From positions 1-64,000 of IMG/VR virus record IMGVR_UViG_3300029911_000001: a stretch of DNA of 64,000 nucleotides; one strand, written 5' to 3'. This document shows, in pieces, positions 3,943 to 64,000 of the stretch; positions within the stretch are counted from its first letter, which is position 1; every line of letters starts with the position of its first letter. The position numbers and the translations under genes are program-made. The notes beneath the pieces are model-generated. The model was not told the origin of the DNA. It made no database searches and saw only the letters and a list, made by a program, of their open reading frames with translations.

Positions 3943-3978
3943 GGAAGCTCTCCTTACTATGGAGTTTAAAGTCCAACT

Positions 3979-13709: not shown

Positions 13710-14606
13710 CTACAAAGAGATGAGGTCAAAGGCACCATTGGTGATATAAAGCTTATAGGGGAGATTGGTTTCAATGTCAGTAAACGGCAGGTAGGGAACC
13801 CCCACTCCACTCAGCACTGGGATAAACTCCAATGCACCACTCGTGACTTGAAGCTGGTACAAGCTGCTCGTAACCGAGTCAATCAGTATCACCTCACTCA
13901 CGCCTGCTGCCACTACAACAGGGATGACAGTCACTGCTCCATCTGCAACTACAACGTTATAGGCACCCTCTGTAACGGTATCCACAAATGTGAATACAAG
14001 CACCGTAACTTGAGCCGTTGTAGTAAGTGCGAGGTGCCCCACCACGTCATAGGCGTCCAACGTAAAGAGAGTTGTTGTAGACACTCCTTCTGGAAAGAAC
14101 ACACTCCCAACGCCCCCTGTATCGATGAGCCCAGAGTCATACCCCGTCGCCGTTATTCTAATTTGAACAATACCCGTGGTCTCCCAGATAAGGGTGAGGG
14201 GGACGTAAAGGGCTGTGACCGAGTTAGGGATAGCTCTAAGGATTGCAGTTGGGGTGGGGTTTGTTCCTACGTCTCCTGCGCTACTGTACCCTGCTATCAA
14301 AGCGAAGCTGGGTAACCCCCTCACCCCTGAGTCTATAAAGAAGGGTCTGGGCATGTGGTGTATGGCTTGAATCACTCCCTGTAGGTTGATTGAAGTGTCC
14401 ATATAGAGCAGGTACCTATTATTTTCGACATCGAACGCGAATGTACGTACCGGGGTGAGGTACCCATCCACATACACTTCAAGGTCGCGGCGAGGGTCGA
14501 ACTCCCCTAGAGGTCCTTCCTGCACAAATGGACCGAGGTAGTCATTCAGAATCCACTGGATGCGGTCAGGGTAGGGGGTATTGGTTTCAAAACTAAACAT
14601 CGTCAT
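13710..14606 (-). CDS. putative virion structural protein with three C-terminal ~23-aa repeats
   Basis: Beta-rich 298 aa; three D-x-x-T-x3-Y-x-[LV]-x-[VI]-x2-G-A repeats. Confidence 0.65.
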   Translation of the reverse strand: MTMFSFETNTPYPDRIQWILNDYLGPFVQEGPLGEFDPRRDLEVYVDGYLTPVRTFAFDVENNRYLLYMDTSINLQGVIQAIHHMPRPFFIDSGVRGLPSFALIAGYSSAGDVGTNPTPTAILRAIPNSVTALYVPLTLIWETTGIVQIRITATGYDSGLIDTGGVGSVFFPEGVSTTTLFTLDAYDVVGHLALTTTAQVTVLVFTFVDTVTEGAYNVVVADGAVTVIPVVVAAGVSEVILIDSVTSSLYQLQVTSGALEFIPVLSGVGVPYLPFTDIETNLPYKLYITNGAFDLISL

Positions 14607-17064
14607 CCCCCACCAACATAGACAGCAGTTTCATCTCTAGTGAAGTCTGCTTGCGTTTCTTCATCTTCTGTTCAACCTGTTCTTTGGTTTTACGCATGGT
14701 GCTCAACAGGTCGTCGTCCGTTGGAACGTTGTGTCCATGCTCTGCCTTCTCAGCCTCAGTCTCATAGGGGAGCCCCTTATGCAAGTGGGGTTCCTTCTTT
14801 ATCTTGTCGTGCTCCTGTTGCTCAAGCTTATGTTCTTCGTTCTCCACCATAGCGTTGAGGTCGTCTTCCCCCTCCGGCTCTTCCTTGGACACATCCTCAG
14901 TCTTCGGCGTGTCCACAACCAAGGGTTCTGTCGCGTTCTCATTACGTTCGACAACACCGGGGACTTCTTCCTCTTCGGGAGCCTTCTTACCTTCTTCCTG
15001 TTCACGCAGGGCATCGATGAGCTTTTGTTGGATGCTCTTGTTTTTCTTCTCGCGGAGCTTCTTTATCTCCTGACGCTTCTTCATCGCGTCCTGTTCCTTC
15101 TTCAGTTTCTCCGACTTCTCCGTGGGCTGTTGTTTGTCCTTGTTCCGTTTAACCGTATTCTCACGGATAATGTTCTGAATGTTGTGCTGCACAGAGGGTA
15201 GGATACGTTCCAGCACAGCCTTTTCGTGCTTGCAATTGTGTACGACCACACCATTAGCTATAAATGATTCATCTTCATCCACGGTCAAATCGTGAAAATA
15301 TTCCGGGGCATCAACATCATTCGCTGAGTGAAGCACTCTAGTAAACCCATCTTGCCATACATCGGTTTCTTGGTTAGGAAGACCTGTATTCAACTGGTCG
15401 ATAACATGAGTACGCAACCTACCCCTCATCAAATCAAGAAGCTGGGGGTACTGTTTGTAATTCCAGTAAAGGCGGAAATACCTGTTTTTCTTTCTAACCC
15501 CCTCCTTTTTACCCCGCCAATCTTGGTGGAGACGCCCATGCCAAATACCCATGCTATACAGCATGGTAGATATTTGGGATACAACATGAGGAGAGATTGA
15601 ATACACATATTGTTGCCCCGAAGCATCAAAATGCCCATCCCCCAAAGCGTAAGATGACACAAGGGCTTGAATGGCCTCTGTGTTCCACTTAAACACATCA
15701 GGAGCGAGGCGCTTCGTAAGGGAGCCGCACCCCGCCAATTGAATCATCTTAGCCGCAAACTTACCGTCATTGACAATGACATTGAGCCACTTTTTCCCCC
15801 CATAGTTGCGAAACTTAATTTGAATATCAGCTTCAGCCCCGAGAACCCCAAACAATTTGGACTGGATATCCTGCCCAAGAGTTTCGGCCTCGTCCTGATT
15901 AATCGTAAAGTTTACCCCCCATACACGAGAGGTTACCCCGTTTATATCGCATACCACTCCTTTTGTGGTGGGTCTGCCTGACTTGACCTTATTCGGGATT
16001 CCCTTTCTATATATTGGGCTACCTTCTGCCAAATAATACCCCAGCAAAGAAGCAAAGTTGGAATCAACTTCAGTGCCTCCATCCCATTGTATTTTTGGGA
16101 AAAACAGGTACTCGTGAAACTCCAATTTATCCGATTCAACCCACCCCAACTTGCCTTGTGAGCAGTCTTCAATTTCAGGATCGCCCACATGGGCGACCCG
16201 GTTTTGCACTCGGGATATAGTGCCCTGACTAACCCCATACCTCTCAGCCAGAGTGTACTGATTTTCTATACTTGAATGTATCTCAGCTATTGCTTCCTCA
16301 GAGAGTTTTCGAGAAGGACGATTACGGTGGTGACCCGGCAAGAACTTACGCCCCCACTTTACCCCCCTATAACCGAGGGGCAGTGAACCTTTACAGCCAC
16401 AGAAGCAGGTTTCATTTCCTCGCACAACAGCTAGTGGGTGCTCTTTAGATACAATCAGGGGTTCGGATGCCCCTTTAGCTCTAACCTCCCGAGCTATCTC
16501 TCCAACATGTGCAGGTCGTCCAGAAACATGAGTAACTTTACGAGCACGCCCTTTATGAGTGACAACCCAATCCCCCACCTGTACATTTTCAATCAGTTTT
16601 TCAGTACCATCCCCCATCAGGACGCGGGTTCCGGGGGCTACGCATAAAACAAAATTCTTACGTAGGTCAAGCCGCTTCGTAGGAGCAGTAAGTTCCGGGC
16701 GTGGCTCACCCAGCAGGGCATCTCGCTGGTGAAGGTTCCACTGAGCCCCCCAGTAGAGATGGGCAGGGCAGCTACAATTAAGCTTCACATCAAGGTCGTT
16801 GGCGTTCTGAGTATCCTCCACCTTGTCCACGTCAAACTTCACCGTCACGTCGTGACCGGCAGGGTCTGAGTAGGACTCACGGCACTTAACGTTGTAGCGA
16901 AGAAACAACTGCTTCGGGTTCGAGTCGAGCAGGGAGGGAGTACAGCCGGGACGACGCTTGATACTAAAAGAATTCGTCTGGCTCACAAGTTCGGGTACGC
17001 TAATCGCCACTTTAGTTTGCGGGTAGCTGATGTTGCCGAGTGAGATGGTGATAAAGGAAGCCAT
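14593..17064 (-). CDS. SWIM zinc-finger protein interrupted by an intein (353 aa extein)
   Basis: CSC...CKH SWIM motif is restored after removing a 470 aa insertion; charged C-terminal tail. Confidence 0.8.
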   Translation of the reverse strand: MASFITISLGNISYPQTKVAISVPELVSQTNSFSIKRRPGCTPSLLDSNPKQLFLRYNVKCRESYSDPAGHDVTVKFDVDKVEDTQNANDLDVKLNCSCPAHLYWGAQWNLHQRDALLGEPRPELTAPTKRLDLRKNFVLCVAPGTRVLMGDGTEKLIENVQVGDWVVTHKGRARKVTHVSGRPAHVGEIAREVRAKGASEPLIVSKEHPLAVVRGNETCFCGCKGSLPLGYRGVKWGRKFLPGHHRNRPSRKLSEEAIAEIHSSIENQYTLAERYGVSQGTISRVQNRVAHVGDPEIEDCSQGKLGWVESDKLEFHEYLFFPKIQWDGGTEVDSNFASLLGYYLAEGSPIYRKGIPNKVKSGRPTTKGVVCDINGVTSRVWGVNFTINQDEAETLGQDIQSKLFGVLGAEADIQIKFRNYGGKKWLNVIVNDGKFAAKMIQLAGCGSLTKRLAPDVFKWNTEAIQALVSSYALGDGHFDASGQQYVYSISPHVVSQISTMLYSMGIWHGRLHQDWRGKKEGVRKKNRYFRLYWNYKQYPQLLDLMRGRLRTHVIDQLNTGLPNQETDVWQDGFTRVLHSANDVDAPEYFHDLTVDEDESFIANGVVVHNCKHEKAVLERILPSVQHNIQNIIRENTVKRNKDKQQPTEKSEKLKKEQDAMKKRQEIKKLREKKNKSIQQKLIDALREQEEGKKAPEEEEVPGVVERNENATEPLVVDTPKTEDVSKEEPEGEDDLNAMVENEEHKLEQQEHDKIKKEPHLHKGLPYETEAEKAEHGHNVPTDDDLLSTMRKTKEQVEQKMKKRKQTSLEMKLLSMLVGDDDV
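15235..16644 (-). mobile_element. intein with LAGLIDADG-type endonuclease and extra HTH/Cys module
   Basis: Starts CVAPGTRVLMGDG and ends HDLTVDEDESFIANGVVVHN followed by +1 Cys; LLGYYLAEG and YALGDG motifs. Confidence 0.9.
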
Positions 17065-47171: not shown

Positions 47172-48587
47172 TTACTCCGCGTCCTGAAAGTAGTCGAAGC
47201 TGGCTGCGGTACTGCGAACCTCATCCAGCGTGAAATCCTTCTTCAGTTCGCCGTTGAGGAACACGGTCTTGAGGTAGTTGCCGTAGCTGTCCTCTTCCGT
47301 GGTGTCGATAGTACGCCAGCCGCCGTCGCTGTTGAACAGGTTGAAGCGGCCACCGATGGATGCCTTCGAAGAATCCGTCTTCGGGTTCTTGAAGACCGGA
47401 CTCCACTGCCCTGCCCGGTTGATGGCCGAGCACTTGATAGCAAAGCGCATCGTGTCGCGGTTCTGCTGCTGCAACAGGGCACCGCCCATGCCGTAGCCCC
47501 AGTTGTCCATCGACCAACCCGACCGGGTGAGGGAGGAGTTGATGCGAAGGATGTTCTGATAGTTCACGCCGTCGCCCTGAATCGCACGAATCTGTGCCGG
47601 GAGAACCTTGTAGCCCTTGGCGTTGGTCTCGAAGCCGAACTTCTCCGCAACTGCGTTGAAGATGTCTTCGAGGACAACCACAGGGTCACCTGAGTCCGGG
47701 CGAAGCACGACAGTACCGTCCCGACGCAGAACCTTCTCACGAAGCTGGTTGCCGAAGATTTCAGCGACCGCGTTGTGCGTGTCGTAGCTGTCAACCACGC
47801 ACGCGAGAAGCGCAGTGGGCGACTTGTCGAGCATGTTCTCGTAGGCATCACGCTCGTTAGCCTGACCCCATGACGTGACCGTGCTGTGTTCCATAGCAGG
47901 GATAGAGAACCCCGGCATATCCTTGGCTCCGTAATAGTCACGTAGCAGTATGGCCGCTTCCATCGTGTCTGAGCCCATGAAGTTGACCAGATGTGCTGCT
48001 CCGCCGATAGCCGCCGATTCTTGCGAGGAGACGCCACGGGCTCCAAAGTCATGCAGCTTGAACGGCAAGCCAGCAGGAGTTCCGGTGCGAACCAAGTCCT
48101 TGCCAATTTCCTGCTTGATGTGCCATGACAGGGTGCCGACCGTGATGGGGTACCATGTTCCTCGGAGGATGATGGTCTCCGCCCAGTTTGTCAGCCAAGG
48201 AAACTCATCATCCGTGTTCTCAATGGTCAGCAGGGCGTTCTTCACAGAAACAACTGTACCCTCCGGCACCGCACGAATCTTGAGGGGAAGGCGACCGTCG
48301 TGCTTCTCCAGCAACCTGAGCCAACCCGTCGTATTGAATACCTTATCGGAGCCAAAGTGAGCCGCCGCAAATGCTTGAGCCTCGTCTACGTCTTCCTTAG
48401 TGAAGACCTTACCGACCAAGTAGGTCTTGAGGGTGTACTGAAGACCGAAGAACATCGTGTCCTTCCAAAAACCTCCGCGAGACATAAGGTGGGAGTAAAT
48501 AGTTCGAGTATCTGGGGGGTACTGAAAATGGTGGGAAAGCTTGTAACTGTCCGTTGTCAGTAGGGGGTTAACTCTCAGTTTTTGCAC
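47172..48587 (-). CDS. nadV: nicotinamide phosphoribosyltransferase (Nampt)
   Basis: TDSYKLSH..QYP, LHDFGARG, IPAMEHS, RPDSGDP, IQGDG and FAIKCS motifs. Confidence 0.95.
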   Translation of the reverse strand: MQKLRVNPLLTTDSYKLSHHFQYPPDTRTIYSHLMSRGGFWKDTMFFGLQYTLKTYLVGKVFTKEDVDEAQAFAAAHFGSDKVFNTTGWLRLLEKHDGRLPLKIRAVPEGTVVSVKNALLTIENTDDEFPWLTNWAETIILRGTWYPITVGTLSWHIKQEIGKDLVRTGTPAGLPFKLHDFGARGVSSQESAAIGGAAHLVNFMGSDTMEAAILLRDYYGAKDMPGFSIPAMEHSTVTSWGQANERDAYENMLDKSPTALLACVVDSYDTHNAVAEIFGNQLREKVLRRDGTVVLRPDSGDPVVVLEDIFNAVAEKFGFETNAKGYKVLPAQIRAIQGDGVNYQNILRINSSLTRSGWSMDNWGYGMGGALLQQQNRDTMRFAIKCSAINRAGQWSPVFKNPKTDSSKASIGGRFNLFNSDGGWRTIDTTEEDSYGNYLKTVFLNGELKKDFTLDEVRSTAASFDYFQDAE

Positions 48588-50162: not shown

Positions 50163-51164
50163 TTATTTCAATCCTTCCGCTGCGAGTTCCTTGGGCGTCA
50201 TGTGCGTGTAGGTGACGTTCATCCGGCCAACCTCGATGGTGTCCCACACGTACAGGCCGAAGTGCTTGTACACGACGGGGAAGACACTCTCCCGGTGCGT
50301 GTCGATGAGCAGTTCTGCCTTCATCTGGTCGATGGGAAACCACTTAACCTCTTCAATGTCATCGCCAGCAATCGCATTGAGCGAGGGTGACTCCGCCGCG
50401 AAGACGAGCGACTTGATTTGGTCGGGCTCCCCTTTCCACCGCCAGTCAGGGATGAGAGCAGAGCCGATGAACTGAGGTTCATTCACCACGAGGCTGGTCT
50501 CCTCCATGGCTTCACGGGCAGCGTCGTACTCGTAGCTGGGGGTGTAGGGCTCAGAGAAGCCACCGATGAACCGCCACTGCGTCTCACCCGGCTTGCGACC
50601 GAGCAGGAACAGCGTTTTGGTGTCGTCGTTCTCCGGCTTGTGGTAAATCACCACGTCCACCGTCGCCTTCACAGCAGGACGGATGTTGGTCATGGCGTAG
50701 ATGACGCCAGCACGGAACTCCGGGGACTCCATGACCGTGTTGGTAATTTTCGCACGGATGGTGGTGCCGCTGATGCCGTCGAGCGTGTTGGGGAGAGTCA
50801 GTTCAATCGGCTTGTACGCCCCATGGTAGTGCGGTACGAAAGAATCGCGAGAGCCGTACAGCGTCACGTCGCCGTAGTCCACTACGTCACGAATAGCCCT
50901 GTCCAAGTTCCGCGACCACGTTGCATCTTCCTTGGTGTCGGTGAGGGGGAAAATCATGAAGTCGGGATACGCAGCCTGAACCATCGCCTTGCGAGTCTCG
51001 AAGTCGAGGGGGTTGTTGTAGGTCGAGCCAATGGACTTCTGACCGAGGAACAGAATGACCTTGCTGTGCCGTGCCCTTACTTCATCGAACAGGGCTCTGT
51101 GTCCAGCGTGAAGAGCATCGACTTGGCAGCGTGCGACAAGAACGCCGTAGTTAGGCTTTTGCAT
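50163..51164 (-). CDS. nadM: bifunctional NMN adenylyltransferase / Nudix hydrolase
   Basis: ARCQ..LHAGH, NPL, ISGTTIR; Nudix box GGF...AAREAMEET; AGDD. Confidence 0.92.
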   Translation of the reverse strand: MQKPNYGVLVARCQVDALHAGHRALFDEVRARHSKVILFLGQKSIGSTYNNPLDFETRKAMVQAAYPDFMIFPLTDTKEDATWSRNLDRAIRDVVDYGDVTLYGSRDSFVPHYHGAYKPIELTLPNTLDGISGTTIRAKITNTVMESPEFRAGVIYAMTNIRPAVKATVDVVIYHKPENDDTKTLFLLGRKPGETQWRFIGGFSEPYTPSYEYDAAREAMEETSLVVNEPQFIGSALIPDWRWKGEPDQIKSLVFAAESPSLNAIAGDDIEEVKWFPIDQMKAELLIDTHRESVFPVVYKHFGLYVWDTIEVGRMNVTYTHMTPKELAAEGLK

Positions 51165-53067: not shown

Positions 53068-55002
53068 CTAATCATCATTAATTAATCCCAATTCCACAAG
53101 GAACCGGCTAGGAGCTACTCTACGTACATCAGCCCCCCGCTGTTCCATAGCATGAGCGCAAATAGTCAACTGGTCTTTAGCTCTAGTACAGGCGACGTAC
53201 CATAGCCTGCGCTCTTCCTCAATTTCCTCGGGAGATTGACAGAAGAGATGAGGTAAACTCCCCTCCACTACATTAGTCACATACACCCTTTGAAACTCTA
53301 GACCTTTAGCACTATGTATTGTGCTCACTGTTACTTGCCCTTCCTTGTCATCCTCGCGTGCCCGTTCAAGTGTAATCTGGAAGACCACATCTTCGGTAGT
53401 CATCTTCTGGTCTTCAGAGAGACCGCGAACAAGTTCCTTGAAGCGTTCGATGTTCTCCAGCTTCGACTTTATCTTGTCCGGTTCCTTCTTGTACTTGTTG
53501 TCGATGTACTTGTTGTAGTCCATCGCCGAGATGATTTTGTCGAGAGCCTGAACCGGATACTCTCGGTACCTCTGGATGTTCTCCATGGCAGACACAAACA
53601 AGCTGAGCTTGTCGATGATGTTGCAGCCTTGAATCAGGTCGCCATCATATTTCTCATTCGCCGTCTTGCGGATGCGTTCAAGAGCCACATCACCAACACC
53701 ACGTTTCGGTATGCTCACTGCACGAGCGAGAGCGGTGAAGTCTTTCGGGTTGGCGACAAGACGCAAGTAAGAGATAATATCGCGTACCTCTTCTGTCTGA
53801 AGTAAGCCGCGACCACCACGCACCACGTAAGGGATGCGGTAGCGAACGAGGGCGTTCTCAATGTCCATAATCTGACGAGCAGAGCGGACGAGAATCGCGT
53901 TGTCCTTGTATGCGATGTGACCCTTCTTCCGCATATTGTCCTTGTTGATTTCGGATGCGATGAGCAGGGCAATGTCGATGGGCAGAGAGGCTCGTGTTAG
54001 TTCAACCGTTCCCTTGTTCTCCTCGTCTCCACGGAAGGTGGACATACGAAGGGGCACCGTGTCCACCATCTTCGCCTGTATGTGATTGGCGAGGTAAACA
54101 ATGCGAGGAAGACTGCGGTGATTCTTAGCAATCCGGTAGAGAATGGGGGTGCGTCCTCTCCACCCCTCTGAGAACTCCTTGAGGAGATGGGGAGCCGAGC
54201 CGTTGAAGCCCATGATACTCTGAGAAATATCTCCTACCGTCATCAGGTTGGGGTTGTCGGGCGCGAGGAGCCCATTCACGACGCCCCACTGGGGAACAGA
54301 TAAATCCTGAGCCTCGTCCACCAGCACAATGGTAAATGCCTTATGCAACTGAGCTAACCACACCGGGTCTTGCTCACATCGGCGATTGAAGAAACACAAC
54401 ATATCCGAGAAGTCGAGGTTGTTGGCCCGATGTTTTTCTTCCTCATACAGCTTCCAGATTTGTAAGTCGAAGGGCTCCATCGCATGATAACCTGCGTGGG
54501 CGACAAGAGCCTGTTCATGCACATCATCGGTGTAGTCTACACAAAAGCCGAGGCCACGAGCGCGATGGTAGTTCACCTTCTCTAAAAATTTGTATACAAA
54601 TGAGCCAAGGCTAATACCCTTTTCTTTGACGTTGACCGTACGTTCCACAATCCGGCGAATCATCTGGCTCTGGTCGTAGTCATCCAGCGGCGTCACTCGC
54701 TCCTGTAAACCAAAACCAGCAGGGTTCTTACGAATCGCGGAGAGAGCAATGGAGTGGATGGTGGATACCTTAGGGGTGAAAAGTGAGTCAGGGGATATGT
54801 CCAACCGCTCTAAAAGCTCACCCGCCGCTTTATTGGTGAAGGTCACGCAACAAATTCGTCTAGGTTCCACCCCCTGAGCGATAAGCCACTTCACACGCTC
54901 TGTTAGTACACGGGTCTTCCCGGAACCCGCACCGGCGATGAGACAGGCAGGAGCACCTAGCGGGTGTTCAACCGCTGCCATCTGTTCTTCATTGAGTTGC
55001 AT
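53068..55002 (-). CDS. uvrD: UvrD/Rep/PcrA superfamily 1 helicase
   Basis: LNEEQ, AGAGSGKT, VTFTNKAA, VDEAQD, NHRS, TIHSAKGLEF and EERRLWYVACTRA motifs. Confidence 0.95.
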   Translation of the reverse strand: MQLNEEQMAAVEHPLGAPACLIAGAGSGKTRVLTERVKWLIAQGVEPRRICCVTFTNKAAGELLERLDISPDSLFTPKVSTIHSIALSAIRKNPAGFGLQERVTPLDDYDQSQMIRRIVERTVNVKEKGISLGSFVYKFLEKVNYHRARGLGFCVDYTDDVHEQALVAHAGYHAMEPFDLQIWKLYEEEKHRANNLDFSDMLCFFNRRCEQDPVWLAQLHKAFTIVLVDEAQDLSVPQWGVVNGLLAPDNPNLMTVGDISQSIMGFNGSAPHLLKEFSEGWRGRTPILYRIAKNHRSLPRIVYLANHIQAKMVDTVPLRMSTFRGDEENKGTVELTRASLPIDIALLIASEINKDNMRKKGHIAYKDNAILVRSARQIMDIENALVRYRIPYVVRGGRGLLQTEEVRDIISYLRLVANPKDFTALARAVSIPKRGVGDVALERIRKTANEKYDGDLIQGCNIIDKLSLFVSAMENIQRYREYPVQALDKIISAMDYNKYIDNKYKKEPDKIKSKLENIERFKELVRGLSEDQKMTTEDVVFQITLERAREDDKEGQVTVSTIHSAKGLEFQRVYVTNVVEGSLPHLFCQSPEEIEEERRLWYVACTRAKDQLTICAHAMEQRGADVRRVAPSRFLVELGLINDD

Positions 55003-57367: not shown

Positions 57368-57398
57368 GAAAACGCCGTGAGTCTCCTCACGGCGTTTC
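57368..57398 (-). terminator. intrinsic terminator closing the TerD/RNA unit
   Basis: aaacgccgtgag/ctcacggcgttt stem with a short T-run. Confidence 0.7.
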
Positions 57399-57406
57399 AA
57401 CTTTTC

Positions 57407-57480
57407 TCGGCGGAGAGCAGTAGACCTTATTTTTGAGTTTAAGTCAATGGTTTAGAAGGAAGGGTTACAATAGCCGCCGA
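57407..57480 (-). ncRNA. structured RNA repeat copy R1
   Basis: Closing stem TCGGCGG/CCGCCGA; conserved GGCTATT-N4-CCCTTCCTTCT ... AGGT-N4-TGCTC. Confidence 0.7.
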
Positions 57481-57487
57481 TTCTTGA

Positions 57488-57574
57488 TTGACGAGGGTGT
57501 TTCAGATACACGCCCAGCATATGCCACTGAGGTTGTTAGACCACGCATCTCGCGTAGCACCATGCCCTCGTCAA
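57488..57574 (-). ncRNA. candidate multi-branched RNA
   Basis: 10-bp closing stem TTGACGAGGG/CCCTCGTCAA with internal hairpins. Confidence 0.45.
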
Positions 57575-57579
57575 AGTTG

Positions 57580-59769
57580 TTAGGCCGACTTCGCCTTGGA
57601 CTTTGCCTTCGGCTTCACGACTTCATCAGTCATGAACTCCGACGCAATCTTATCCAGTTCGAAGGGAGTTCCGGCCTTTACCGAGAACACCACGTCTGCC
57701 TTGGTTTCGTCAGTTACAAGCTTACCACGTCCTGCGGCGTGGAGAGCAAACAAATCGTACAGGTTCGGCTTCTTGATGTTCGTGAAAGCCCTACCGAGAA
57801 GTTCGATGGTACCGCGAGTCGAGGCAACAGTGTTCCCGCCCCAACCGTAGTCACGACGCGAGTTCATCGCAGCGTCGGCCCAGATGACCTTGCGGTCAAC
57901 GAGGTCGATAATCATGGGCACACCTGAGCGTGCAGCCATCGACAGGTCAGCCTTGTCCTCAATGGTACGAGGGTCAAAGACTTCTCCCGACTGTGCCTTC
58001 TCACGCAGCATGAAGCCAGCGAAGCACTCCGGCAGGTCGCAGAAGTTCTGCTCCGTGTATCCGTGAACCGTCATGACAACGTAACGTACACGCTGCTTGA
58101 TAGCCTTTGGGATGTCCACGTCGATGAACTCCGCAGCACCGTTCGGTGCCGACGTGATGTCGCCGCTGTGAACCGCGTAGCCTTCACGCAGGTTGTAGAA
58201 CGTGACCGCACCGAGAGCGTTCCAGTTCTCGTCATAGGATGACGCCGACAAGTCTAGGTCTACCCGGTTGCCCCAGTAGGTGTCCGCCTTGTCCTCCTTC
58301 ATGTCATGCCACCAGATGAAGAAGCGGAGGGTGTCCTTGTCATTGCCGAAGGCCAGCTTCGAGCCACGCACGAGAGTACGCAGGGACTTGCTTGCCGAAC
58401 GCTGTGAGAAGGGCACGAGGCACTCCCTCAGAGCCGGGTCAATGTAGACCTTGCCCAGCTTCGGCAGAGCGGAGAACCGCTCAGCGAGAACACGCTTGAT
58501 GCCATCGACCACGAGCAAGCAGATGCTGGGACGCAGCGTCGGCAGGTCGTTCTCCAGAGCCGTGCAATGAGCCACGTTGCCCTTCGGGAATACCACACGC
58601 AGAACATAACCCTCCGCACGATTCGAGAAGTGCGTCATGACCTGCAACAGTACCGGCGTAGAAACATCCGATGCTACATCCAAGAAAGACTCCGCGACAC
58701 GAGTCTGAGTACGAGCCGCCGCATTGCGGAGCACGTGGTCGAGACGACGAGCGAACTCACCCGGACGCTGCTGAAGCAACGTGATGCTCTTGATGGTCTC
58801 GCCAGCACGCACGGACGCTTCTACCTGCGAACGGTAGGTCTCAATGGTCTTGTTGTTACGCAAGTCCTTGAACGCATAGAACGAGGTAGGGAACTTCTTC
58901 TGGAACTCGCCCGGATGCAGACGCTCACCGAGACGAATCCAGCGGGACGGCCAACGGGCCATGTCCTCTGCCTTGTTCTTGATGGGCTCCAGCAAGCCGA
59001 GAATGTAACGACGCTCCGAACGCTTGAACGCCTTGAACTTGGACTTGTCCGTAAGAGACACGTCACCGCCGCTCATCGCCGTAGCGAGACGAAGTACGTC
59101 CGTGGCCGTCTTGAAGTACGGAGTGAGGTCGATGACACCGTTGACCAGCAAGGAACCCACGAAAGCGAGGTTCTCCTTGTTGCTGATGAGAGCAAGGGAC
59201 TCTTCCACGTTGCCGTAGCCAGCCGTGATGAGAGCCTTCAGGTCTTCCTTGTCGGATGCCGACAGAGACGTGTTCGACTTGGCGAGGTTGTTGGCAATCT
59301 CGTCTGCCTCATTTGCCGTGGCAACTTCAATGACACGCAGGTTCACACGCTCATCGAGCGGGGCACGCTTATCCTTCGCGTACTTCGGCAACCAAATCAT
59401 GTCCGGGTCGCCGGTCGCGTCTACCAGTCGGAACGAGAAGTAGTGGATGATGGCGTTGAAGTACAACTCCGCCGCGTCGGCCTCGATGACCTGCTGAGGG
59501 AAATTCGGGTACATGGGCGTGTAGTTGCGGACGCCCTTCTGCTCCTTGAGAACAGCGAGGATGTCATCAAAAATCTTGAACGCGGTTACGCCGTTCAAGT
59601 TCGTCAACGCACGGAAGAGCGTGGGGGAGAGGGTGTAGCCCAATGACTGAAGGTTCAAGTTGAACGTCGATACTGCCGGGACATTCAAAGTGAACTTGTG
59701 AGCAGTCTTCGTCCCTGCCGGGAGAAGAACCTTGTTCTTACGACGCAAAAGAATGGACTGGACGTTCAT
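57580..59769 (-). CDS. large helical (putative Ro/TROVE-like) protein with a C-terminal TerD-like domain
   Basis: 729 aa; PMYPNFP, RPGEFARRLDHVLR; TerD motifs VDLDLSA and HSGDITSAPNGAAEFIDVD; strong codon bias. Confidence 0.7.
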   Translation of the reverse strand: MNVQSILLRRKNKVLLPAGTKTAHKFTLNVPAVSTFNLNLQSLGYTLSPTLFRALTNLNGVTAFKIFDDILAVLKEQKGVRNYTPMYPNFPQQVIEADAAELYFNAIIHYFSFRLVDATGDPDMIWLPKYAKDKRAPLDERVNLRVIEVATANEADEIANNLAKSNTSLSASDKEDLKALITAGYGNVEESLALISNKENLAFVGSLLVNGVIDLTPYFKTATDVLRLATAMSGGDVSLTDKSKFKAFKRSERRYILGLLEPIKNKAEDMARWPSRWIRLGERLHPGEFQKKFPTSFYAFKDLRNNKTIETYRSQVEASVRAGETIKSITLLQQRPGEFARRLDHVLRNAAARTQTRVAESFLDVASDVSTPVLLQVMTHFSNRAEGYVLRVVFPKGNVAHCTALENDLPTLRPSICLLVVDGIKRVLAERFSALPKLGKVYIDPALRECLVPFSQRSASKSLRTLVRGSKLAFGNDKDTLRFFIWWHDMKEDKADTYWGNRVDLDLSASSYDENWNALGAVTFYNLREGYAVHSGDITSAPNGAAEFIDVDIPKAIKQRVRYVVMTVHGYTEQNFCDLPECFAGFMLREKAQSGEVFDPRTIEDKADLSMAARSGVPMIIDLVDRKVIWADAAMNSRRDYGWGGNTVASTRGTIELLGRAFTNIKKPNLYDLFALHAAGRGKLVTDETKADVVFSVKAGTPFELDKIASEFMTDEVVKPKAKSKAKSA

Positions 59770-59796
59770 TGGACGTTACCTCTTTCAAGCAAAATA

Positions 59797-59871
59797 GTCG
59801 GGGAGCATCAGACCTAATCGTTGGCAAAGCCCGAAGGCTTTAAGTGAGAAGGAAGGGCTGAAATAGCCGAC
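59797..59871 (-). ncRNA. structured RNA repeat copy R2
   Basis: Closing stem GTCGG/CCGAC; same conserved blocks; TCAG/CTGA covarying helix; UUCG hairpin in the variable loop. Confidence 0.7.
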
Positions 59872-59876
59872 CAGTA

Positions 59877-59948
59877 TGGGCTAGGGAGTAGTGTACCTGA
59901 GTCTCATCCAATAGAAGTGTAGAAGGAAGGGACACAATAGCCAGCCCA
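59877..59948 (-). ncRNA. structured RNA repeat copy R3
   Basis: Closing stem TGGGCTGG/CTAGCCCA; same blocks; GTGT/ACAC covarying helix. Confidence 0.7.
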
Positions 59949-59954
59949 GTTTCT

Positions 59955-59985
59955 ATAATACGACAGAAATGGAAAAATGTGTGAA
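59955..59985 (-). promoter_or_regulatory. putative promoter for the RNA-TerD unit
   Basis: GTATTAT (-10-like) 6 nt before the first base of R3; weak -35; same GTATTA motif at ~19270, ~56455 and ~63907. Confidence 0.5.
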
Positions 59986-61512: not shown

Positions 61513-61577
61513 GAACCTATCAACCTCTCAGATGCTGAGGAGCTAACCTCTACTAAAGAGGTTGATAGTCACGAAAG

Positions 61578-61658
61578 AGCTACGAGAGGGATTCGAACCC
61601 CCGGTGTTTGTATGCCGCATTACAAGTGCGGTGCATTCGACCACTCAGCCATCGTAGC
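61578..61658 (-). tRNA. tRNA-Thr(UGU) with a 12-nt variable region
   Basis: GCTACGA/TCGTAGC acceptor; CCGCA-CTTGTAA-TGCGG; GGGGG-TTCGAAT-CCCTC; no encoded CCA. Confidence 0.85.
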
Positions 61659-61664
61659 ATACCT

Positions 61665-61934
61665 TTACATTTTTACAAAAGAGAGTACCGGTACATCTGG
61701 GTAGCTCTCCCTGACTTCTTTATTCCAAACCTCGTGCCTTGCATGACATTCTGAACAGTAGAACGCTCCCGCATCGAAGGAGTGGTCTTGATAATCACTC
61801 GACCAACCCCCTGTGCCGGGAGGGCACCAGAACTCAGCCGAGTTTTCACATCTCCCCTTGTAGTTCTCAATGTCCGTGGATACAAACCCCACAGACTCCG
61901 GTACGCCCATGCATTGAATCTTCAAATCGGTCAT
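61665..61934 (-). CDS. hypothetical protein
   Basis: GAGGA RBS; Cys motifs. Confidence 0.6.
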   Translation of the reverse strand: MTDLKIQCMGVPESVGFVSTDIENYKGRCENSAEFWCPPGTGGWSSDYQDHSFDAGAFYCSECHARHEVWNKEVRESYPDVPVLSFVKM

Positions 61935-61942
61935 GTATCCTC

Positions 61943-62251
61943 TTACTTATACTTCGGGAAGAATCCAAAGTTCTTGGGGTACTCTTCTCTCGGTATGAAA
62001 ACGATTGCAACTTCTTGTCCGTTCAACGTGGACTCGGTGATGACTTGATGCTTCGGCACTTCCTTCGCCTTCTCGAACTCCTCGTCGGTTACCTTGCACA
62101 CAACCTTGGCGAAGGACGTTTGCAGCCACTTGACCATATCCGGGTCGGTGGGGAAGTTCAGGTAGAGCGACAGAGGCCCGTGTGCTGCGGCCACGATGGC
62201 GTTACCTACCGGGATGGAGCCCTTCACCAAAACGTACATCTTCAATTTCAT
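61943..62251 (-). CDS. peptidyl-tRNA hydrolase, PTH2-like
   Basis: KMYVLV...G....AAH....W.....KVVCKV; true start at 62251 (the longer ORF overlaps tRNAs). Confidence 0.7.
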   Translation of the reverse strand: MKLKMYVLVKGSIPVGNAIVAAAHGPLSLYLNFPTDPDMVKWLQTSFAKVVCKVTDEEFEKAKEVPKHQVITESTLNGQEVAIVFIPREEYPKNFGFFPKYK

Positions 62252-62340
62252 GCTGGCCTCGTGTATGAGTCCGATAGGGCTCATTGGACTCATATATGAA
62301 GCACTAAAGCCGTTAGTGCTCCATATATGGGACTTTATCT

Positions 62341-62413
62341 TGGTGGGCACTTCGGGAGTTGAACCCGAATCACCGTTTCCCTTGGCAGGGTGCCACGGTG
62401 AACCAATGTGCCC
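62341..62413 (-). ncRNA. tRNA-like RNA without a D arm
   Basis: GGGCAC/GTGCCC-ACCA end; TTCGGG-TTCAACT-CCCGAA T arm; single long arm TCACCGT/ACGGTGA. Confidence 0.65.
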
Positions 62414-62419
62414 GAATCT

Positions 62420-62506
62420 TGGTTGGGGAGGCAGGATTCGAACCTGCAATGAGCTTACGCTCGGGGGCTTCAAAGGCCCTTGACCTACCATTGGTACGAC
62501 TCCCCA
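62420..62506 (-). tRNA. tRNA-Gln(UUG) with a long variable arm
   Basis: TGGGGAG/CTCCCCA-ACCA; GGGC-CTTTGAA-GCCC; variable hairpin GAGC-GTAA-GCTC. Confidence 0.8.
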
Positions 62507-62511
62507 ATAAC

Positions 62512-62745
62512 TTATGCTGTGACCAAATCCTTCGGAGGCCACTCAAACTTCCAGTTGCTCCGCTCACGAATCTTGTTATCGCGAATGTTGTAGAACCCGG
62601 CGTACGCTGCACACGTGATAGAGCAGAACACAGGATGACTCAGGTCGTCCGGCATCTCAACCATCTGAGGCCCACGTGGGGTGTCAGGGTCTTCGTGATG
62701 ACGCCGATAATCTGCACAACCGGGTGCTGGACACGCAATCAACAT
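62512..62745 (-). CDS. small Cys-rich protein
   Basis: CP..GC and FCSITC motifs. Confidence 0.55.
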   Translation of the reverse strand: MLIACPAPGCADYRRHHEDPDTPRGPQMVEMPDDLSHPVFCSITCAAYAGFYNIRDNKIRERSNWKFEWPPKDLVTA

Positions 62746-62748
62746 AGC

Positions 62749-63348
62749 TCACTCCCAGTACAGCCTATAGTTCGTTCCGTATACTTCGTTCAACTTCTTG
62801 AAGAAGGCATCGGTCTTTATCTTGACCATGAAATCGTCACCCTTGGCGACGACGCCTTCCCACACTGGATACTTTCCGCTGCGGACATCATCAACGAACT
62901 GCTTGTTGAGGTTGCCCTCGTAAACCACTTCAGCCGCGTATGGCAGGTCTCCGTACTGCTTGAGAAACTGCCGGGGCGACATCATCCCCTTCTTGAACAG
63001 GTACACATCGAACAAGCGAAGCTGCTTAGGCTCCCCCGGCGTATGCACACCCGCGAAACTTGAGTCCCCGAAGAACTCTGTGAAGACCGTGGTCCTCTGG
63101 CAGTTCCGGTCGTAGTCCTTCACCCGGCGAGTCAACTCATCTGCCATGGTATCCATGAAGACCGGAATCGCTTCACCGAAGACCGGGTTGCTCTTGTCGA
63201 ACAACTCATGTCGGGTACCAAACTTGAACCAACCCTTCTTGGGGTTCCACTCCCAACGAAGGTTCGAGCCATCGTACTTGTAGAAAGCGATGCACTGCTT
63301 ACCTAGAGGGGCTTTGGAACTTCCTTCGATACTTGGGTACTGCTCCAT
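62749..63348 (-). CDS. ATP-dependent RNA ligase family protein
   Basis: Nucleotidyltransferase motifs KYDGSN, EFFG, LFDV, EGVVAK and KIK. Confidence 0.8.
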   Translation of the reverse strand: MEQYPSIEGSSKAPLGKQCIAFYKYDGSNLRWEWNPKKGWFKFGTRHELFDKSNPVFGEAIPVFMDTMADELTRRVKDYDRNCQRTTVFTEFFGDSSFAGVHTPGEPKQLRLFDVYLFKKGMMSPRQFLKQYGDLPYAAEVVYEGNLNKQFVDDVRSGKYPVWEGVVAKGDDFMVKIKTDAFFKKLNEVYGTNYRLYWE

Positions 63349-63456
63349 ACATCCCTTTCAATTTCTCCAATACCACTTCCATAATCAGGGAGTGGTTTAT
63401 GAAATGCCTTCAATGTGATACCGACACGAGTAATCCAAAGTTCTGCTCCAACAAGT

Positions 63457-63613
63457 GACCATATTGATGGAAATTACATGAACAACCATCGTAATAACTT
63501 GCGGTGCAACTGCCCAAACTGCGATATACAACTACCTACGTCAAAAGGGGAAGAACCGAGGCAACGGTAGGCATTGGCGTCGAGTTCGTTATGCGGAGGG
63601 TAAGTCCCGCTAA
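63457..63613 (+). pseudogene. HNH endonuclease remnant
   Basis: DHIDGNYMNNHRNNLRCNCPNC..LPT then a frameshift into KNRGNGRHWRR.RY.EGKS*. Confidence 0.7.
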
Positions 63614-63616
63614 AAA

Positions 63617-63692
63617 TGGAGCCGGTTGAGGGACTCGAACCCTCTGCCTTTTGCTTACCAAGCAAATACACATCCATATATGCTTAACCGGC
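63617..63692 (-). tRNA. tRNA-Thr(GGU)
   Basis: GCCGGTT/AACCGGC-TCCA; TTTGC-TTGGTAA-GCAAA; canonical T arm; atypical D arm. Confidence 0.85.
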
Positions 63693-63698
63693 CTTTCT

Positions 63699-63902
63699 TT
63701 ACTTACAACAGCGACTAATCTGCTTATCAAGTTCCTGTGCAGTCTCGTGCGCTTTTTCAAAAAACTCATCAACATCTTCGGAGTAGGTGACTCCGTGAAG
63801 CAGAGCACGTCGCCGCTTGTCCTCTGCTACGTTGTGGCGAAGGTTCTCCAGCATCTGCTGAGCGATTGCTGCTGCGGCCTCATCCAAGTTTTCCATACTC
63901 AC
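63699..63902 (-). CDS. small hypothetical protein
   Basis: 67 aa ORF between tRNA genes. Confidence 0.5.
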   Translation of the reverse strand: MSMENLDEAAAAIAQQMLENLRHNVAEDKRRRALLHGVTYSEDVDEFFEKAHETAQELDKQISRCCK

Positions 63903-63917
63903 CTAATACTGCGAAAC

Positions 63918-64000
63918 TGGAGCTAGGTGAGGGACTCGAACCCTCGGTGTTTGTATACCGCTTTACGAAAGCGGTGCCGTCGCCACTGAGCCAACCTAGC
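63918..64000 (-). tRNA. tRNA-Thr(CGU) with a 12-nt variable region
   Basis: GCTAGGT/ACCTAGC-TCCA; CCGCT-TTCGTAA-AGCGG; 5' end coincides with the window edge. Confidence 0.85.

What the first reader, a model, noticed from the sequence alone, without database searches (positions are those of the whole stretch)
57407..59960. TerD-fused Ro/TROVE-like gene bracketed by three covarying structured RNA repeats: candidate new ribonucleoprotein
Seen: three 72-75 nt elements, two directly upstream (R3, R2) and one downstream (R1), share GGCTATT-N4-CCCTTCCTTCT-[variable]-AGGT-N4'-TRCTC. N4/N4' covary (GTGT/ACAC, TCAG/CTGA, GTAA/CTAC with one mismatch or bulge). The closing stems differ in sequence but all pair. 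A TATTAT box sits 6 nt before R3 and a terminator follows R1, so the unit looks self-contained. Established: Ro60/TROVE proteins bind Y RNAs, encoded next to the ro gene, through a bulged GGUC-C-GA helix. Inference: the GGUCUGA/UCAGCC bulged helix resembles that site but lies on the 3' strand, so these may be a distinct Y-like RNA family whose variable loops act as adaptors or guides. Autoregulatory binding sites are an alternative. The Ro-like assignment of the N-terminal region is my recollection of this family and is not verified.
Basis: partly seen in the sequence, partly recalled or inferred. Interest (0 to 1): 0.85.

Follow-up and report, generated by a model that had tools for sequence, protein, structure and literature searches.

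The report
Y-like RNAs flanking TerD-domain gene
A phage gene for a large TerD-domain protein is flanked by three copies of an uncatalogued, strongly covarying ~72-nt hairpin RNA; the same RNA accompanies this protein family in many phages and bacteria, which points to a new Ro/Y-RNA-like ribonucleoprotein probably linked to tRNA/RNA repair, although the protein is not a Ro relative.

Summary
Three ~72-nt elements lie on the minus strand: R3 (59878-59947), R2 (59797-59872) and R1 (57407-57480).

A covariance model built from them finds the same RNA beside almost every homologue I fetched. That is 95 copies in 59 non-redundant loci from phages, bacteria of many phyla and one MAG labelled as an archaeon. 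94 of the 95 are on the gene's strand, 96.9% of cells are paired, and compensatory change is massive.

Rfam 15 has no family for it. In some relatives the apical loop carries a YrlA-type tRNA-like module, which gives only sub-threshold YrlA hits.

The C-terminal TerD fold is confirmed. The N-terminal "Ro/TROVE-like" assignment is not: there is no TROVE Pfam hit, and Foldseek finds no Ro60 for either the full-length or the N-terminal model.

Context points to RNA repair: Pnkp/Hen1, Thg1-like, RNA ligase and RlaP islands in two bacterial phyla, and tRNA arrays, RtcB and an RNA-ligase-like gene in phages, including this window.

Best reading: a new Y-RNA-like RNP built on an unrelated protein. 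Binding is inferred, not shown.

The parts
59955..59960 (-). TATTAT, a -10-like hexamer 7 nt upstream of R3; possible start of an R3-R2-gene-R1 transcript
   Evidence: Read directly from the sequence. The sigma-70 scan did not call it as a promoter, so this is weak evidence.
59878..59947 (-). R3, a class A RNA copy. It has a 7-bp P1, an internal loop (5' CUAU / 3' UACUC), and a P2 of GUGU/ACAC plus CCU/AGG with a C.U mismatch. The apical loop reads UCCUUCUA followed by a small hairpin with an AUUGG loop.
   Evidence: Covariance-model hit of 57.9 bits, E 2.5e-14. Fold given. Class A orthologues occur in L004, L005, L036, L092, L093, L095, L097 and L099.
59797..59872 (-). R2, a class C RNA copy. 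It has the same stem, and its apical loop holds the GC hairpin AAAGCC-UUCG-GGCUUU followed by G-CCAA-CGAUU. It ends 27 nt before the ATG.
   Evidence: Covariance-model hit of 71.3 bits, E 2.5e-18. Fold given. Class C orthologues are listed.
59779..59784 (-). AAGAGG ribosome-binding site, 9 nt before the ATG
   Evidence: Read directly from the sequence.
58615..59769 (-). Codons 1-385: an all-helical N-terminal domain with no detectable relative of known structure
   Evidence: AF2 models have pLDDT 82-84. Foldseek against PDB gives only weak solenoid/TPR-like hits with E >= 0.06 and no Ro60. BFVD returns only members of the same family.
58363..58614 (-). Codons 386-469: a small alpha/beta linker region that includes the invariant segment VPFSQRSASKSLRTLVRGS
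   Evidence: Secondary structure; invariant columns.
57850..58362 (-). Codons ~470-640: TerD-fold beta-sandwich, with DLDLSA and HSGD..EFIDxD motifs
   Evidence: Foldseek to 3ibz (E 1.1e-5), 2qng and 2qz7. The family profile weakly hits TerD structure 2kxt at query positions 485-545. Pfam TerD hits 3 of 39 homologues.
57580..57849 (-). Codons 641-729 plus the stop codon: a C-terminal alpha/beta domain and a Lys-rich tail
57407..57480 (-). R1, a class B RNA copy lying 100 nt after the stop codon. It has the same stem, and its apical loop holds the hairpin UUGA-CUUAAAC-UCAA with a 7-nt loop.
   Evidence: Covariance-model hit of 64.8 bits, E 2.2e-16. Fold given. Class B orthologues sit downstream of the gene in L092, L093, L095, L096 and L097.
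57370..57397 (.). 12-bp GC-rich hairpin, terminator-like and possibly bidirectional, starting 9 nt after R1
62749..63348 (-). Context only: an RNA-ligase-like ORF of 199 aa inside the tRNA cluster upstream
   Evidence: PHROG 548 'RNA ligase', E 7e-9. tRNAs lie at 61577-61658, 62420-62506, 63617-63692 and 63918-64000.

Best explanation
The locus encodes a ribonucleoprotein module made of one protein and a set of small RNAs.

**Components (shown)**
- The protein is ~700 aa: a novel helical N-domain followed by a TerD beta-sandwich.
- The RNAs are ~70 nt. Their 5' and 3' ends pair (P1, 5-7 bp, with inner G-C pairs).
- An invariant internal loop follows (5' CUA / 3' NUUU), then a freely covarying 7-10-bp P2.
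- The apical loop always opens with UCCUUCUA.

**Inferred mechanism**
- R3, R2, the gene and R1 are transcribed together, or from nearby promoters, and the RNAs are released as stable hairpins.
- The protein recognises the invariant stem, internal loop and UCCUUCU module.
- The variable apical part is displayed to other factors. It can be a D-arm-like, acceptor-like or 7-nt-loop hairpin, or in relatives a whole YrlA-type tRNA-like domain.
- The particle would then act as a scaffold or adaptor in handling damaged or cleaved tRNA/RNA, in the way Ro60-Y RNA works with RtcB and PNPase.
- In phages this would counter host tRNA-targeting defences.

It works like Ro60/Y RNA but is built from an unrelated protein.
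For: **A real, conserved RNA**
- RNAalifold run de novo on 8 MAFFT-aligned copies predicts P1 and P2, with 6 of 12 pairs compensatory.
- On 95 copies, 96.9% of cells are paired, against 60.7% in shuffles and 40-51% when the partner is slid by 1-3 columns. There are 427 double-change cells against 122 in shuffles.
- RNAalifold on those 95 copies finds 13 of 16 pairs with compensatory changes.
- UCCUUCU is nearly invariant (93-95 of 95 at each position).

**Linkage to the protein, in both directions**
- The RNA is found in 32 of 33 distinct viral homologue loci and 42 of 47 genome loci.
- 94 of 95 copies lie on the gene's strand; 78 are upstream (median 109 nt) and 17 downstream; there are 1-4 per locus.
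- In the reverse direction, I scanned viral contigs with the 5' motif. Of the first 80 stretches, 50 held a homologue in the stretch.
- Of the other 30 stretches, 16 were not true RNA hits. Five of the 14 true ones lie on contigs that carry the gene elsewhere.

**Not just a leader**
- The closest relatives keep the orthologous order A-C-gene-B.
- In phage XacN1 the RNAs follow consensus promoters (TTGACA-16-TATAAT, 12 of 12 matches, and TTGACA-17-TATATT). A hairpin plus T-run separates them from the ORF.
- In Weasels2 all four copies are downstream of the gene.

**Likeness to Y RNA**
- tRNA-like T-arm, capped-acceptor and D-arm modules are inserted in the apical loop. They give sub-threshold Rfam YrlA hits in L044 (31 bits, E 0.0012), L176 (43 bits, E 3e-6), L092, L066, L016 and L091.

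**RNA-repair context**
- Pnkp/Hen1, Thg1-like with a kinase, RNA ligase, HD-kinase and RlaP genes surround the gene in Pyrinomonadaceae and in Gimesia.
- Phage loci sit in tRNA arrays; RtcB lies nearby in Weasels2.
- The window has an RNA-ligase-like ORF and 4 tRNAs.

**RNA and protein co-vary**
- At 26-32% protein identity the conserved RNA motifs change. XacN1 has GGCCAC; Weasels2 has GGAUUAAG, UUACUUCU and GCUCACC.
Against: - No experiment shows binding or discrete transcripts.
- The N-domain has no known RNA-binding relative. TerD domains are known for Ca2+ or small-ligand binding, not RNA binding.
- Most bacterial copies end 17-120 nt before the start codon with no room for a terminator, which also fits a 5'-UTR or autoregulatory role.
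- RNA-repair neighbours were seen in two bacterial lineages and in phages only. In Bacillus, Paenibacillus, Laceyella, Acidobacteria, Obscuribacter and Acinetobacter loci the neighbours are unrelated.
- The window itself has no tRNA-like copy.
- Alignment A4 was fitted to the model, so its pair counts lean towards the structure.
- I could not read the main comparative paper on RNA-repair systems (Burroughs and Aravind 2016), so a prior mention cannot be excluded.
Confidence: 0.6

Rival explanations
1. The elements are cis-regulatory: operator sites in the mRNA's 5' and 3' UTRs through which the protein, or another factor, controls its own translation or stability. On this reading they have no trans-acting RNA function.
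For: 78 of 95 copies are upstream on the same strand, many within 17-50 nt of the start codon. R2 ends 27 nt before the ATG.
Against: - There are up to 4-5 divergent copies per locus, with conserved paralogue classes and order.
- 17 copies are downstream, and in Weasels2 all four are.
- In XacN1 the copies have their own consensus promoters and a hairpin plus T-run before the ORF.
- Apical loops carry whole tRNA-like domains.
- Real copies occur kilobases from the gene in phage tRNA arrays.
- Autoregulation could still coexist with the RNP role.
Confidence: 0.2
2. The RNAs are protein-stabilised decoys that mimic parts of tRNA. They would soak up host anticodon nucleases or other tRNA-targeting defence factors rather than scaffold repair.
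For: - Several apical hairpins have 7-nt loops resembling anticodon loops: R1 CUUAAAC, L029 CUGUAAA, L064 and L066 CUUUUAA, XacN1 CUUUUAA.
- Some class C loops end in N-CCA(A) after a GC hairpin.
- tRNA-like modules occur in relatives.
- The phage loci lie in tRNA arrays.
Against: - Most bacterial copies have short, unstructured apical loops.
- Position 33 of the 7-nt loops is not consistently U, and the class B stem UUGA/UCAA is conserved rather than covarying.
- The module is common in bacterial chromosomes with no phage context.
Confidence: 0.12
3. It is an ordinary, if divergent, Ro60 (Rsr)/Y RNA system, as the first reader proposed for the N-terminal region.
For: ncRNAs adjacent to the gene, a stem-plus-module RNA architecture, sub-threshold YrlA hits in relatives, and an RNA-repair context.
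Against: - No TROVE or vWA Pfam hit in the protein or in 39 homologues.
- No Ro60 in PDB sequence searches or Foldseek lists.
- No phage Ro protein in BFVD.
- The RNAs lack the GNCGAAN0-1G Rsr motif described by Chen et al. 2014 (PMC4201824).
- The window's copies have no YrlA or Y_RNA match up to E 10, and relatives' YrlA-like copies stay below YrlA's gathering score.
Confidence: 0.03
4. It is a type III toxin-antitoxin-like pair, with tandem RNA repeats neutralising the adjacent protein.
For: Tandem structured RNA repeats lie upstream of, and co-oriented with, a protein gene.
Against: - The repeats are ~70-130 nt and divergent, with variable loops, and also lie downstream.
- The protein is ~700 aa with no nuclease signature.
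- No PADLOC hit.
- The family is chromosomal and widespread, with 3,046 clusters at 50% identity.
Confidence: 0.03

Closest known systems
Ro60 (Rsr)/Y RNA ribonucleoproteins, especially bacterial YrlA/YrlB (Rfam RF02553; Chen et al. 2014, PMC4201824)
   Same: - One to several ncRNA genes sit next to, and co-oriented with, the protein gene.
- In the RNA the 5' and 3' ends form a long stem with a conserved internal loop, topped by a variable module.
- Some members carry a tRNA-like T-arm, capped-acceptor and D-arm module in the same permuted order as YrlA. Others are simple hairpins with a pyrimidine-rich loop, like YrlB.
- They occur in phages and bacteria.
- They neighbour RNA-repair genes (RtcB, ligases).
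   Different: - The protein has no TROVE ring and no vWA domain. It has a novel helical domain plus TerD.
- The conserved RNA motifs are GG-CUA...UUU-CC and CUUCCUUCUA, not GNCGAAN0-1G.
- YrlA hits stay at 21-43 bits against a gathering score of 69 and rest mainly on the tRNA-like part.
- The three copies in this window have no tRNA-like module.
TerD-family proteins (Pfam PF02342; structures 3ibz, 2qz7, 2kxt)
   Same: The C-terminal ~170 residues adopt the TerD beta-sandwich and keep TerD-like DLDLSA and SGD...D motifs.
   Different: Classical TerD proteins are ~190-aa single-domain proteins of ter operons, linked to Ca2+ or ligand binding and stress. Here the domain is fused behind a ~470-aa unrelated region, there are no ter operon partners, and a dedicated RNA family is present.
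NCBIfam NF041916, MXAN_6230/SCO0854 family RING domain-containing protein
   Same: It is the best named sequence relative (E 5e-136; best stretch residues 308-691 aligned to profile positions 385-763 of 842).
   Different: The score of 454.9 is below the 600-bit cutoff. The phage protein is shorter and has no Cys-rich RING region. It is a RING-less sister group. Some other members instead carry N-terminal ankyrin repeats.
SPFH/Band-7 scaffold with a tRNA-like RNA in RNA-repair operons (Burroughs and Aravind 2016; recalled from the abstract, paper not readable here)
   Same: The idea of a non-enzymatic scaffold protein paired with a cognate tRNA-like ncRNA inside RNA-repair gene neighbourhoods.
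   Different: A different protein fold. I could not check whether that paper mentions the TerD-fusion family.

Membership tests
Ro60/TROVE (Rsr) proteins | TROVE domain (Pfam PF05731) detectable by sequence | tested here: not met
   No Pfam hit for the window protein at E <= 0.1. 0 of 39 homologues hit TROVE at E <= 1.
Ro60/TROVE (Rsr) proteins | HEAT-repeat ring plus vWA fold similar to solved Ro60 structures | tested here: not met
   Foldseek against PDB shows no Ro60 among the listed hits, for either the full-length model or the N-terminal model. The best N-terminal hit has E 0.06. The family profile against PDB sequences finds nothing relevant. BFVD returns no phage Ro protein.
Y RNA / YrlA (Rfam RF00019, RF02553) | Score at or above the Rfam gathering threshold | tested here: not met
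   The window's R1-R3 give no Rfam hit up to E 10 apart from a chance mir-322 match. Relatives with tRNA-like inserts score 21-43 bits against a gathering score of 69.
Y RNA / YrlA (Rfam RF00019, RF02553) | 5' Rsr-binding motif GNCGAAN0-1G (Chen et al. 2014) | tested here: not met
   The family consensus at that place is GG-CUAU, and the motif is not in the consensus of 95 copies.
Y RNA / YrlA (Rfam RF00019, RF02553) | ncRNA genes adjacent to the partner protein gene; stem formed by the 5' and 3' ends plus a variable or tRNA-like module | tested here: met
   adjacency and stem; tRNA-like module, in relatives only.
Y RNA / YrlA (Rfam RF00019, RF02553) | Physical binding to the partner protein | not testable with these tools
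   Needs RIP, EMSA or a structure.
TerD domain family (PF02342) | TerD beta-sandwich fold | tested here: met
   Foldseek to 3ibz (E 1.1e-5, TM-score on target 0.68), 2qng and 2qz7.
TerD domain family (PF02342) | Pfam TerD model hit | tested here: inconclusive
   The window protein has no hit at E <= 0.1. 3 of 39 homologues hit, best E 6.7e-6. One homologue carries a precomputed PF02342 annotation.
NCBIfam NF041916 (MXAN_6230/SCO0854 RING family) | Score at or above the curated cutoff (600 bits), and presence of the RING domain | tested here: not met
   454.9 bits. The translation shows no Cys-rich segment.
Cis-regulatory leader / riboswitch | Single element in the 5' UTR coupled to an expression platform | tested here: not met
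   There are multiple divergent copies and downstream copies, and XacN1 copies have their own promoters and a terminator-like hairpin.
Type III toxin-antitoxin (ToxIN-like) | Near-identical short tandem RNA repeats processed by an adjacent endoribonuclease toxin | tested here: not met
   The repeats are divergent and 60-134 nt long. The protein has no nuclease or defence-system hit.

The most novel reading that the evidence does not exclude
A modular, 'programmable' RNP. The TerD-fusion protein loads a set of paralogous RNAs that share one protein-binding stem. Each displays a different piece of tRNA anatomy: a D-arm-like AUUGG hairpin, an acceptor-like GC hairpin with N-CCA, an anticodon-loop-like 7-nt hairpin, or a whole tRNA-like domain. 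Together they would capture cleaved tRNA fragments or tRNA-targeting enzymes and present them to ligases, Pnkp/Hen1 or Thg1-like enzymes. This would be a second, independently evolved Y-RNA system, used by phages against tRNA-cleaving defences. The class A loop to class C tail complementarity seen in L004, L005 and L099 would then reflect RNA-RNA or RNA-tRNA 3'-end pairing.
Probability: 0.15. Interest if true: 0.92.

Novelty: new variant of a known kind. Interest (0 to 1): 0.8.

Why it matters
Ro60/Y RNA has been the only established example of a protein that uses adjacent tRNA-mimicking ncRNAs as adaptors in bacterial RNA surveillance and repair. Here an unrelated and very widespread protein family (3,046 clusters at 50% identity) has its own dedicated, uncatalogued RNA family with the same design logic. 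That would make Y-RNA-type adaptors a convergent, general solution.

It would also assign a first function to a large 'TerD family / cytoplasmic protein' group and add a new RNA family to Rfam. It would add a candidate phage counter-measure to tRNA-targeting defences.

The idea can be tested at once in culturable systems: Rhodococcus phage Weasels2, and Bacillus and Paenibacillus strains that carry the module.

Tried and rejected
- **Rfam.** At gathering and at permissive thresholds on the window and on 17+ loci, there is no family for the hairpin RNA.
- **DNA similarity.** A search of the locus against 50,697 phage records found nothing.
- **Ro/TROVE test.** I tried Pfam, NCBIfam, PDB sequence search with a single sequence and with a profile, and Foldseek on two AF2 models against PDB and BFVD. 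All were negative for Ro.
- **PADLOC.** The protein and three neighbours gave no hits.
- **UCCUUCU pairing with the gene's own SD.** By inspection, AAGAGG is not complementary. I did not test the idea that the motif mimics the 16S anti-SD tail.
- **Class A loop to class C tail complementarity.** It is perfect over 7-8 bp in L004, L005 and L099, with one compensatory difference. In the window it is only 4 bp and it is absent in L092, L093, L095 and L097. Mean cognate length is 5.2 against 4.6 for non-cognate pairs. I left this as inconclusive.
- **Exact-sequence look-ups.** Two Firmicute homologues returned no record, so I annotated their flanks by ORF plus Pfam instead.
- **Literature.** Searches on TerD with TROVE, RNA repair, Y RNA or RNA motif, and on SCO0854, found no description of this RNA or RNP. 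Burroughs and Aravind 2016 and the Sim et al. 2020 review are not held.


Full report
**1. Observation**

The gene lies on the minus strand at 57580-59769 and encodes 729 aa. On the same strand sit three elements:

- R3 (59878-59947) and R2 (59797-59872) directly upstream.
- R1 (57407-57480), 100 nt after the stop codon.

Each reads GGCTATT-N4-CCCTTCCTTCT-(variable)-AGGT-N4'-T(A/G)CTC. The 22-nt pattern has 3 matches in the window, all on the minus strand, against 0.01 expected. Single-sequence folds give the same architecture for all three: P1, an internal loop, P2 with a C.U mismatch, and an apical loop.

A TATTAT hexamer lies 7 nt before R3, but the promoter scan does not call it. A 12-bp hairpin follows R1. 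No ORF of 40 aa or more lies within the R3/R2 stretch; R1 is overlapped only by a 164-aa ORF antisense to the gene, which I take as spurious.

**2. The RNA is a real, widespread family**

Homologues of the protein were fetched from viral contigs (36 loci) and from genomes (47 loci). The 11-mer CCCTTCCTTCT reappears on the gene's strand beside homologues of ~52% identity.

RNAalifold on 8 MAFFT-aligned copies predicted P1 and P2 de novo. A covariance model built from them then found:

- Copies in 32 of 33 distinct viral loci and 42 of 47 genome loci.
- The host range covers Bacillus, Paenibacillus, Laceyella, Acidobacteriota, Planctomycetota, Melainabacteria-like Obscuribacter, Abditibacteria, Chloroflexota, Gammaproteobacteria and one MAG labelled as an archaeon.
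- In a non-redundant set, 95 copies in 59 loci. 94 are on the gene's strand, 78 upstream (median 109 nt, minimum 17) and 17 downstream. There are 1-4 per locus and the median length is 72 nt.

Covariation is very strong:

- 96.9% of cells are paired, against 60.7% in shuffles and 40-51% for slid partners.
- There are 427 double-change cells against 122 in shuffles.
- RNAalifold on the 95 copies gives a 6-bp P1 and a 10-bp P2, with 13 of 16 pairs showing compensatory changes.

The family consensus is NNNN-GG-CUA-[P2]-CU-UCCUUCUA-(9 to ~80 nt)-AG-[P2']-NUUU-CC-NNNN. UCCUUCU is nearly invariant (93-95 of 95 at each position).

The reverse test also holds. A scan of viral contigs with the 5' motif gave at least 118 stretches. 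I examined the first 80:

- 50 contain a homologue within the held stretch.
- Of the other 30, 16 are not true model hits.
- Of the 14 true hits, 5 lie on contigs that carry the gene elsewhere.

Rfam 15 has no family for this RNA.

**3. Paralogue classes and tRNA-like variants**

Among the closest relatives (52-67% protein identity) the apical loops fall into three conserved classes:

- Class A: a small hairpin with a loop containing AUUGG or UUGG. R3 belongs here.
- Class B: UUGA-(7-nt loop)-UCAA. R1 belongs here.
- Class C: a GC-rich tetraloop hairpin plus a tail, often N-CCAA. R2 belongs here.

The order A-C-gene-B seen in the window recurs in L092, L093, L095 and L097.

In several loci the apical loop holds a complete tRNA-like module with a T arm, a capped acceptor and a D arm. 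Examples are L044:5141-5274, L092:4763-4894, L176 and Weasels2 L091:6076-6201. These give sub-threshold hits to Rfam YrlA of 21-43 bits against a gathering score of 69.

Most bacterial copies instead have short, unstructured loops. These resemble the 'long hairpin with small pyrimidine-rich loop' of YrlB described by Chen et al. 2014 (PMC4201824).

**4. The protein**

- Sequence searches: Pfam gives nothing. PHROG 33734 is of unknown function. NCBIfam NF041916 (RING_SCO0854) scores E 5e-136 but falls below its cutoff. No PDB sequence relative was found.
- Family size: at least 4,257 hits among 8,000 candidates in one database, and 3,046 clusters at 50% identity in another. Sources name these proteins only 'TerD family protein', 'cytoplasmic protein' or 'stress response protein SCP2'.
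- Full-length AF2 model (pLDDT 82, pTM 0.79): it matches only TerD structures significantly (3ibz at E 1e-5). This places a TerD beta-sandwich at about residues 470-640.
- Model of residues 1-470 (pLDDT 84): no PDB match better than E 0.06. The top hits are menin, IFIT5 and TPR-like solenoids, and Ro60 is not listed. In BFVD it matches only its own family.
- TROVE is absent from all 39 homologues scanned, while TerD is found in 3.
- Some members carry N-terminal ankyrin repeats, which fits a scaffold role.

In short, 'TerD-fused' is right and 'Ro/TROVE-like' is not supported.

**5. Context**

- In Pyrinomonadaceae (Acidobacteriota) and Gimesia (Planctomycetota) the gene and its RNAs sit inside RNA-repair islands. 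These hold Pnkp/Hen1, Thg1-like plus an AAA_33 kinase, RNA ligase, HD-kinase, RlaP and PcfJ.
- In phages the module lies in tRNA/tmRNA arrays. In Weasels2 it is 3 kb from RtcB.
- In the window, four tRNAs and an RNA-ligase-like ORF (PHROG 548, E 7e-9) lie 2-4 kb upstream. A small AAA_33-like ORF lies downstream. No TROVE protein is found among the large ORFs scanned.
- In Firmicutes and several other lineages the neighbours are unrelated, so RNA plus gene is a self-contained module there.

**6. Trans-acting RNA or leader?**

Many bacterial copies are close enough to the start codon to be co-transcribed. Three observations argue for independent RNAs:

- In phage XacN1 the three copies follow consensus sigma-70 promoters (12 of 12 and 11 of 12 matches), and a hairpin plus T-run separates them from ORF396.
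- In Weasels2 all four copies follow the gene.
- Real copies occur away from the gene in phage tRNA arrays.

With the multiple conserved paralogues and tRNA-like inserts, this favours stable trans-acting RNAs. Autoregulation may exist in addition.

**7. Mechanism**

I commit to the following, with confidence ~0.6.

Shown:
- A conserved RNA family with an invariant internal loop and loop-opening motif.
- Obligate linkage to the protein family.
- Co-variation of the RNA motifs with protein divergence. XacN1 and Weasels2 have altered motifs at 26-32% protein identity.

Inferred:
- The protein binds the invariant stem/UCCUUCU module.
- The variable apical module recruits tRNA-recognising enzymes or substrates.
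- The RNP works in RNA damage handling, analogous to Ro60-Y RNA.

Not shown: binding, RNA processing, or any role for Ca2+ or another ligand at the TerD domain.

**8. Comparison and novelty**

The module works like Ro60/Y RNA but fails the membership tests for Ro60 (no TROVE or vWA), for Y RNA/YrlA (below the gathering score, and it lacks the Rsr motif) and for NF041916 (below cutoff, no RING).

I found no description of it in the searchable literature. Two key papers could not be read.

I rate it a new variant of a known kind: a Y-RNA-type RNP built on an unrelated protein, with an RNA family new to Rfam.

**9. Caveats**

- Alignment A4 was fitted to the model.
- Model E-values are rough.
- The locus sets come from pattern-seeded searches and are not an unbiased census.
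- The class interpretation of the loops (D-arm-like, acceptor-like, anticodon-like) rests on resemblance only.

Noticed in passing
L004:2875-2946 vs L004:6094-6184; L005:2105-2175 vs L005:5497-5580; L099:4847-4913 vs L099:7198-7280: In these loci the class A loop is perfectly complementary to the class C tail over 7-8 nt: UUGGCGAA/UUCGCCAA, UGGUGAA/UUCACCA and UUUGGCG/CGCCAAA. One compensatory difference separates the versions. In the window the match is only UUGG/CCAA. It could reflect RNA-RNA kissing or pairing to an N-CCA 3' end, or it could be chance within one clade.
   Followed up: partly
L090 (Xanthomonas phage XacN1, AP018399.1) 3500-4000: Three variant copies of the RNA lie upstream of ORF396 (BBA65544). 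Two consensus sigma-70 promoters are present (TTGACA-17-TATATT and TTGACA-16-TATAAT), and a hairpin plus T-run precedes the ORF. A further structured, possibly tRNA-like stretch lies between copies 1 and 2.
   Followed up: partly
L091 (Rhodococcus phage Weasels2, NC_041887.1) 5916-6271: Four tandem copies of a divergent version of the RNA lie downstream of gp266, with motifs GGAUUAAG, UUACUUCU and GCUCACC. The third copy carries a tRNA-like module. None is annotated in the record. RtcB (gp256) and at least five tRNAs lie nearby.
   Followed up: partly
window 62749-63348 (-) and 61577-64000: An RNA-ligase-like ORF (PHROG 548, E 7e-9; no Pfam hit) is embedded among four tRNA genes: Thr-UGU, Gln-UUG, Thr-GGU and Thr-CGU.
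   Followed up: partly
window 47172-48587 (-) and 50163-51164 (-): NAD+ salvage genes are present: NAMPT (NAPRTase/NAMPT_N) and a cytidylyltransferase-like plus NUDIX protein that resembles NMNAT/Nudix. Such a pair is known from phages that counter NAD-depleting defences.
   Followed up: no
window 14593-17064 (-): An 823-aa ORF contains Hint/intein splicing domains, so it is probably an intein-interrupted phage gene. The UvrD-like helicase at 53068-55002 is conserved downstream of the module in relatives L092, L093 and L096, where it is longer; in L093 it carries a faint intein hit.
   Followed up: no
P0218, P0239, P0243, P0186 (homologues): Some family members carry ~150-400 extra N-terminal residues made of ankyrin repeats, which suggests protein-protein scaffolding.
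   Followed up: partly
L040:2846-2912 and L042:2912-2980: The apical loops of these Acidobacteriota copies contain GUUCGAAUC, the tRNA T-loop consensus, without a full tRNA-like module.
   Followed up: no
L016:7305-7371 and L016:2021-2126: A skipping-rope RNA (RF02924, 44 bits, above its gathering score of 36.7) and a sub-threshold drum-like hit lie in the same phage tRNA array that holds the module.
   Followed up: no
L025:2187-2265 and L025:5843-5917: ARAGORN calls two tRNAs with anticodon CUA (labelled Pyl) flanking the module in this phage contig. They may be amber-suppressor tRNAs.
   Followed up: no
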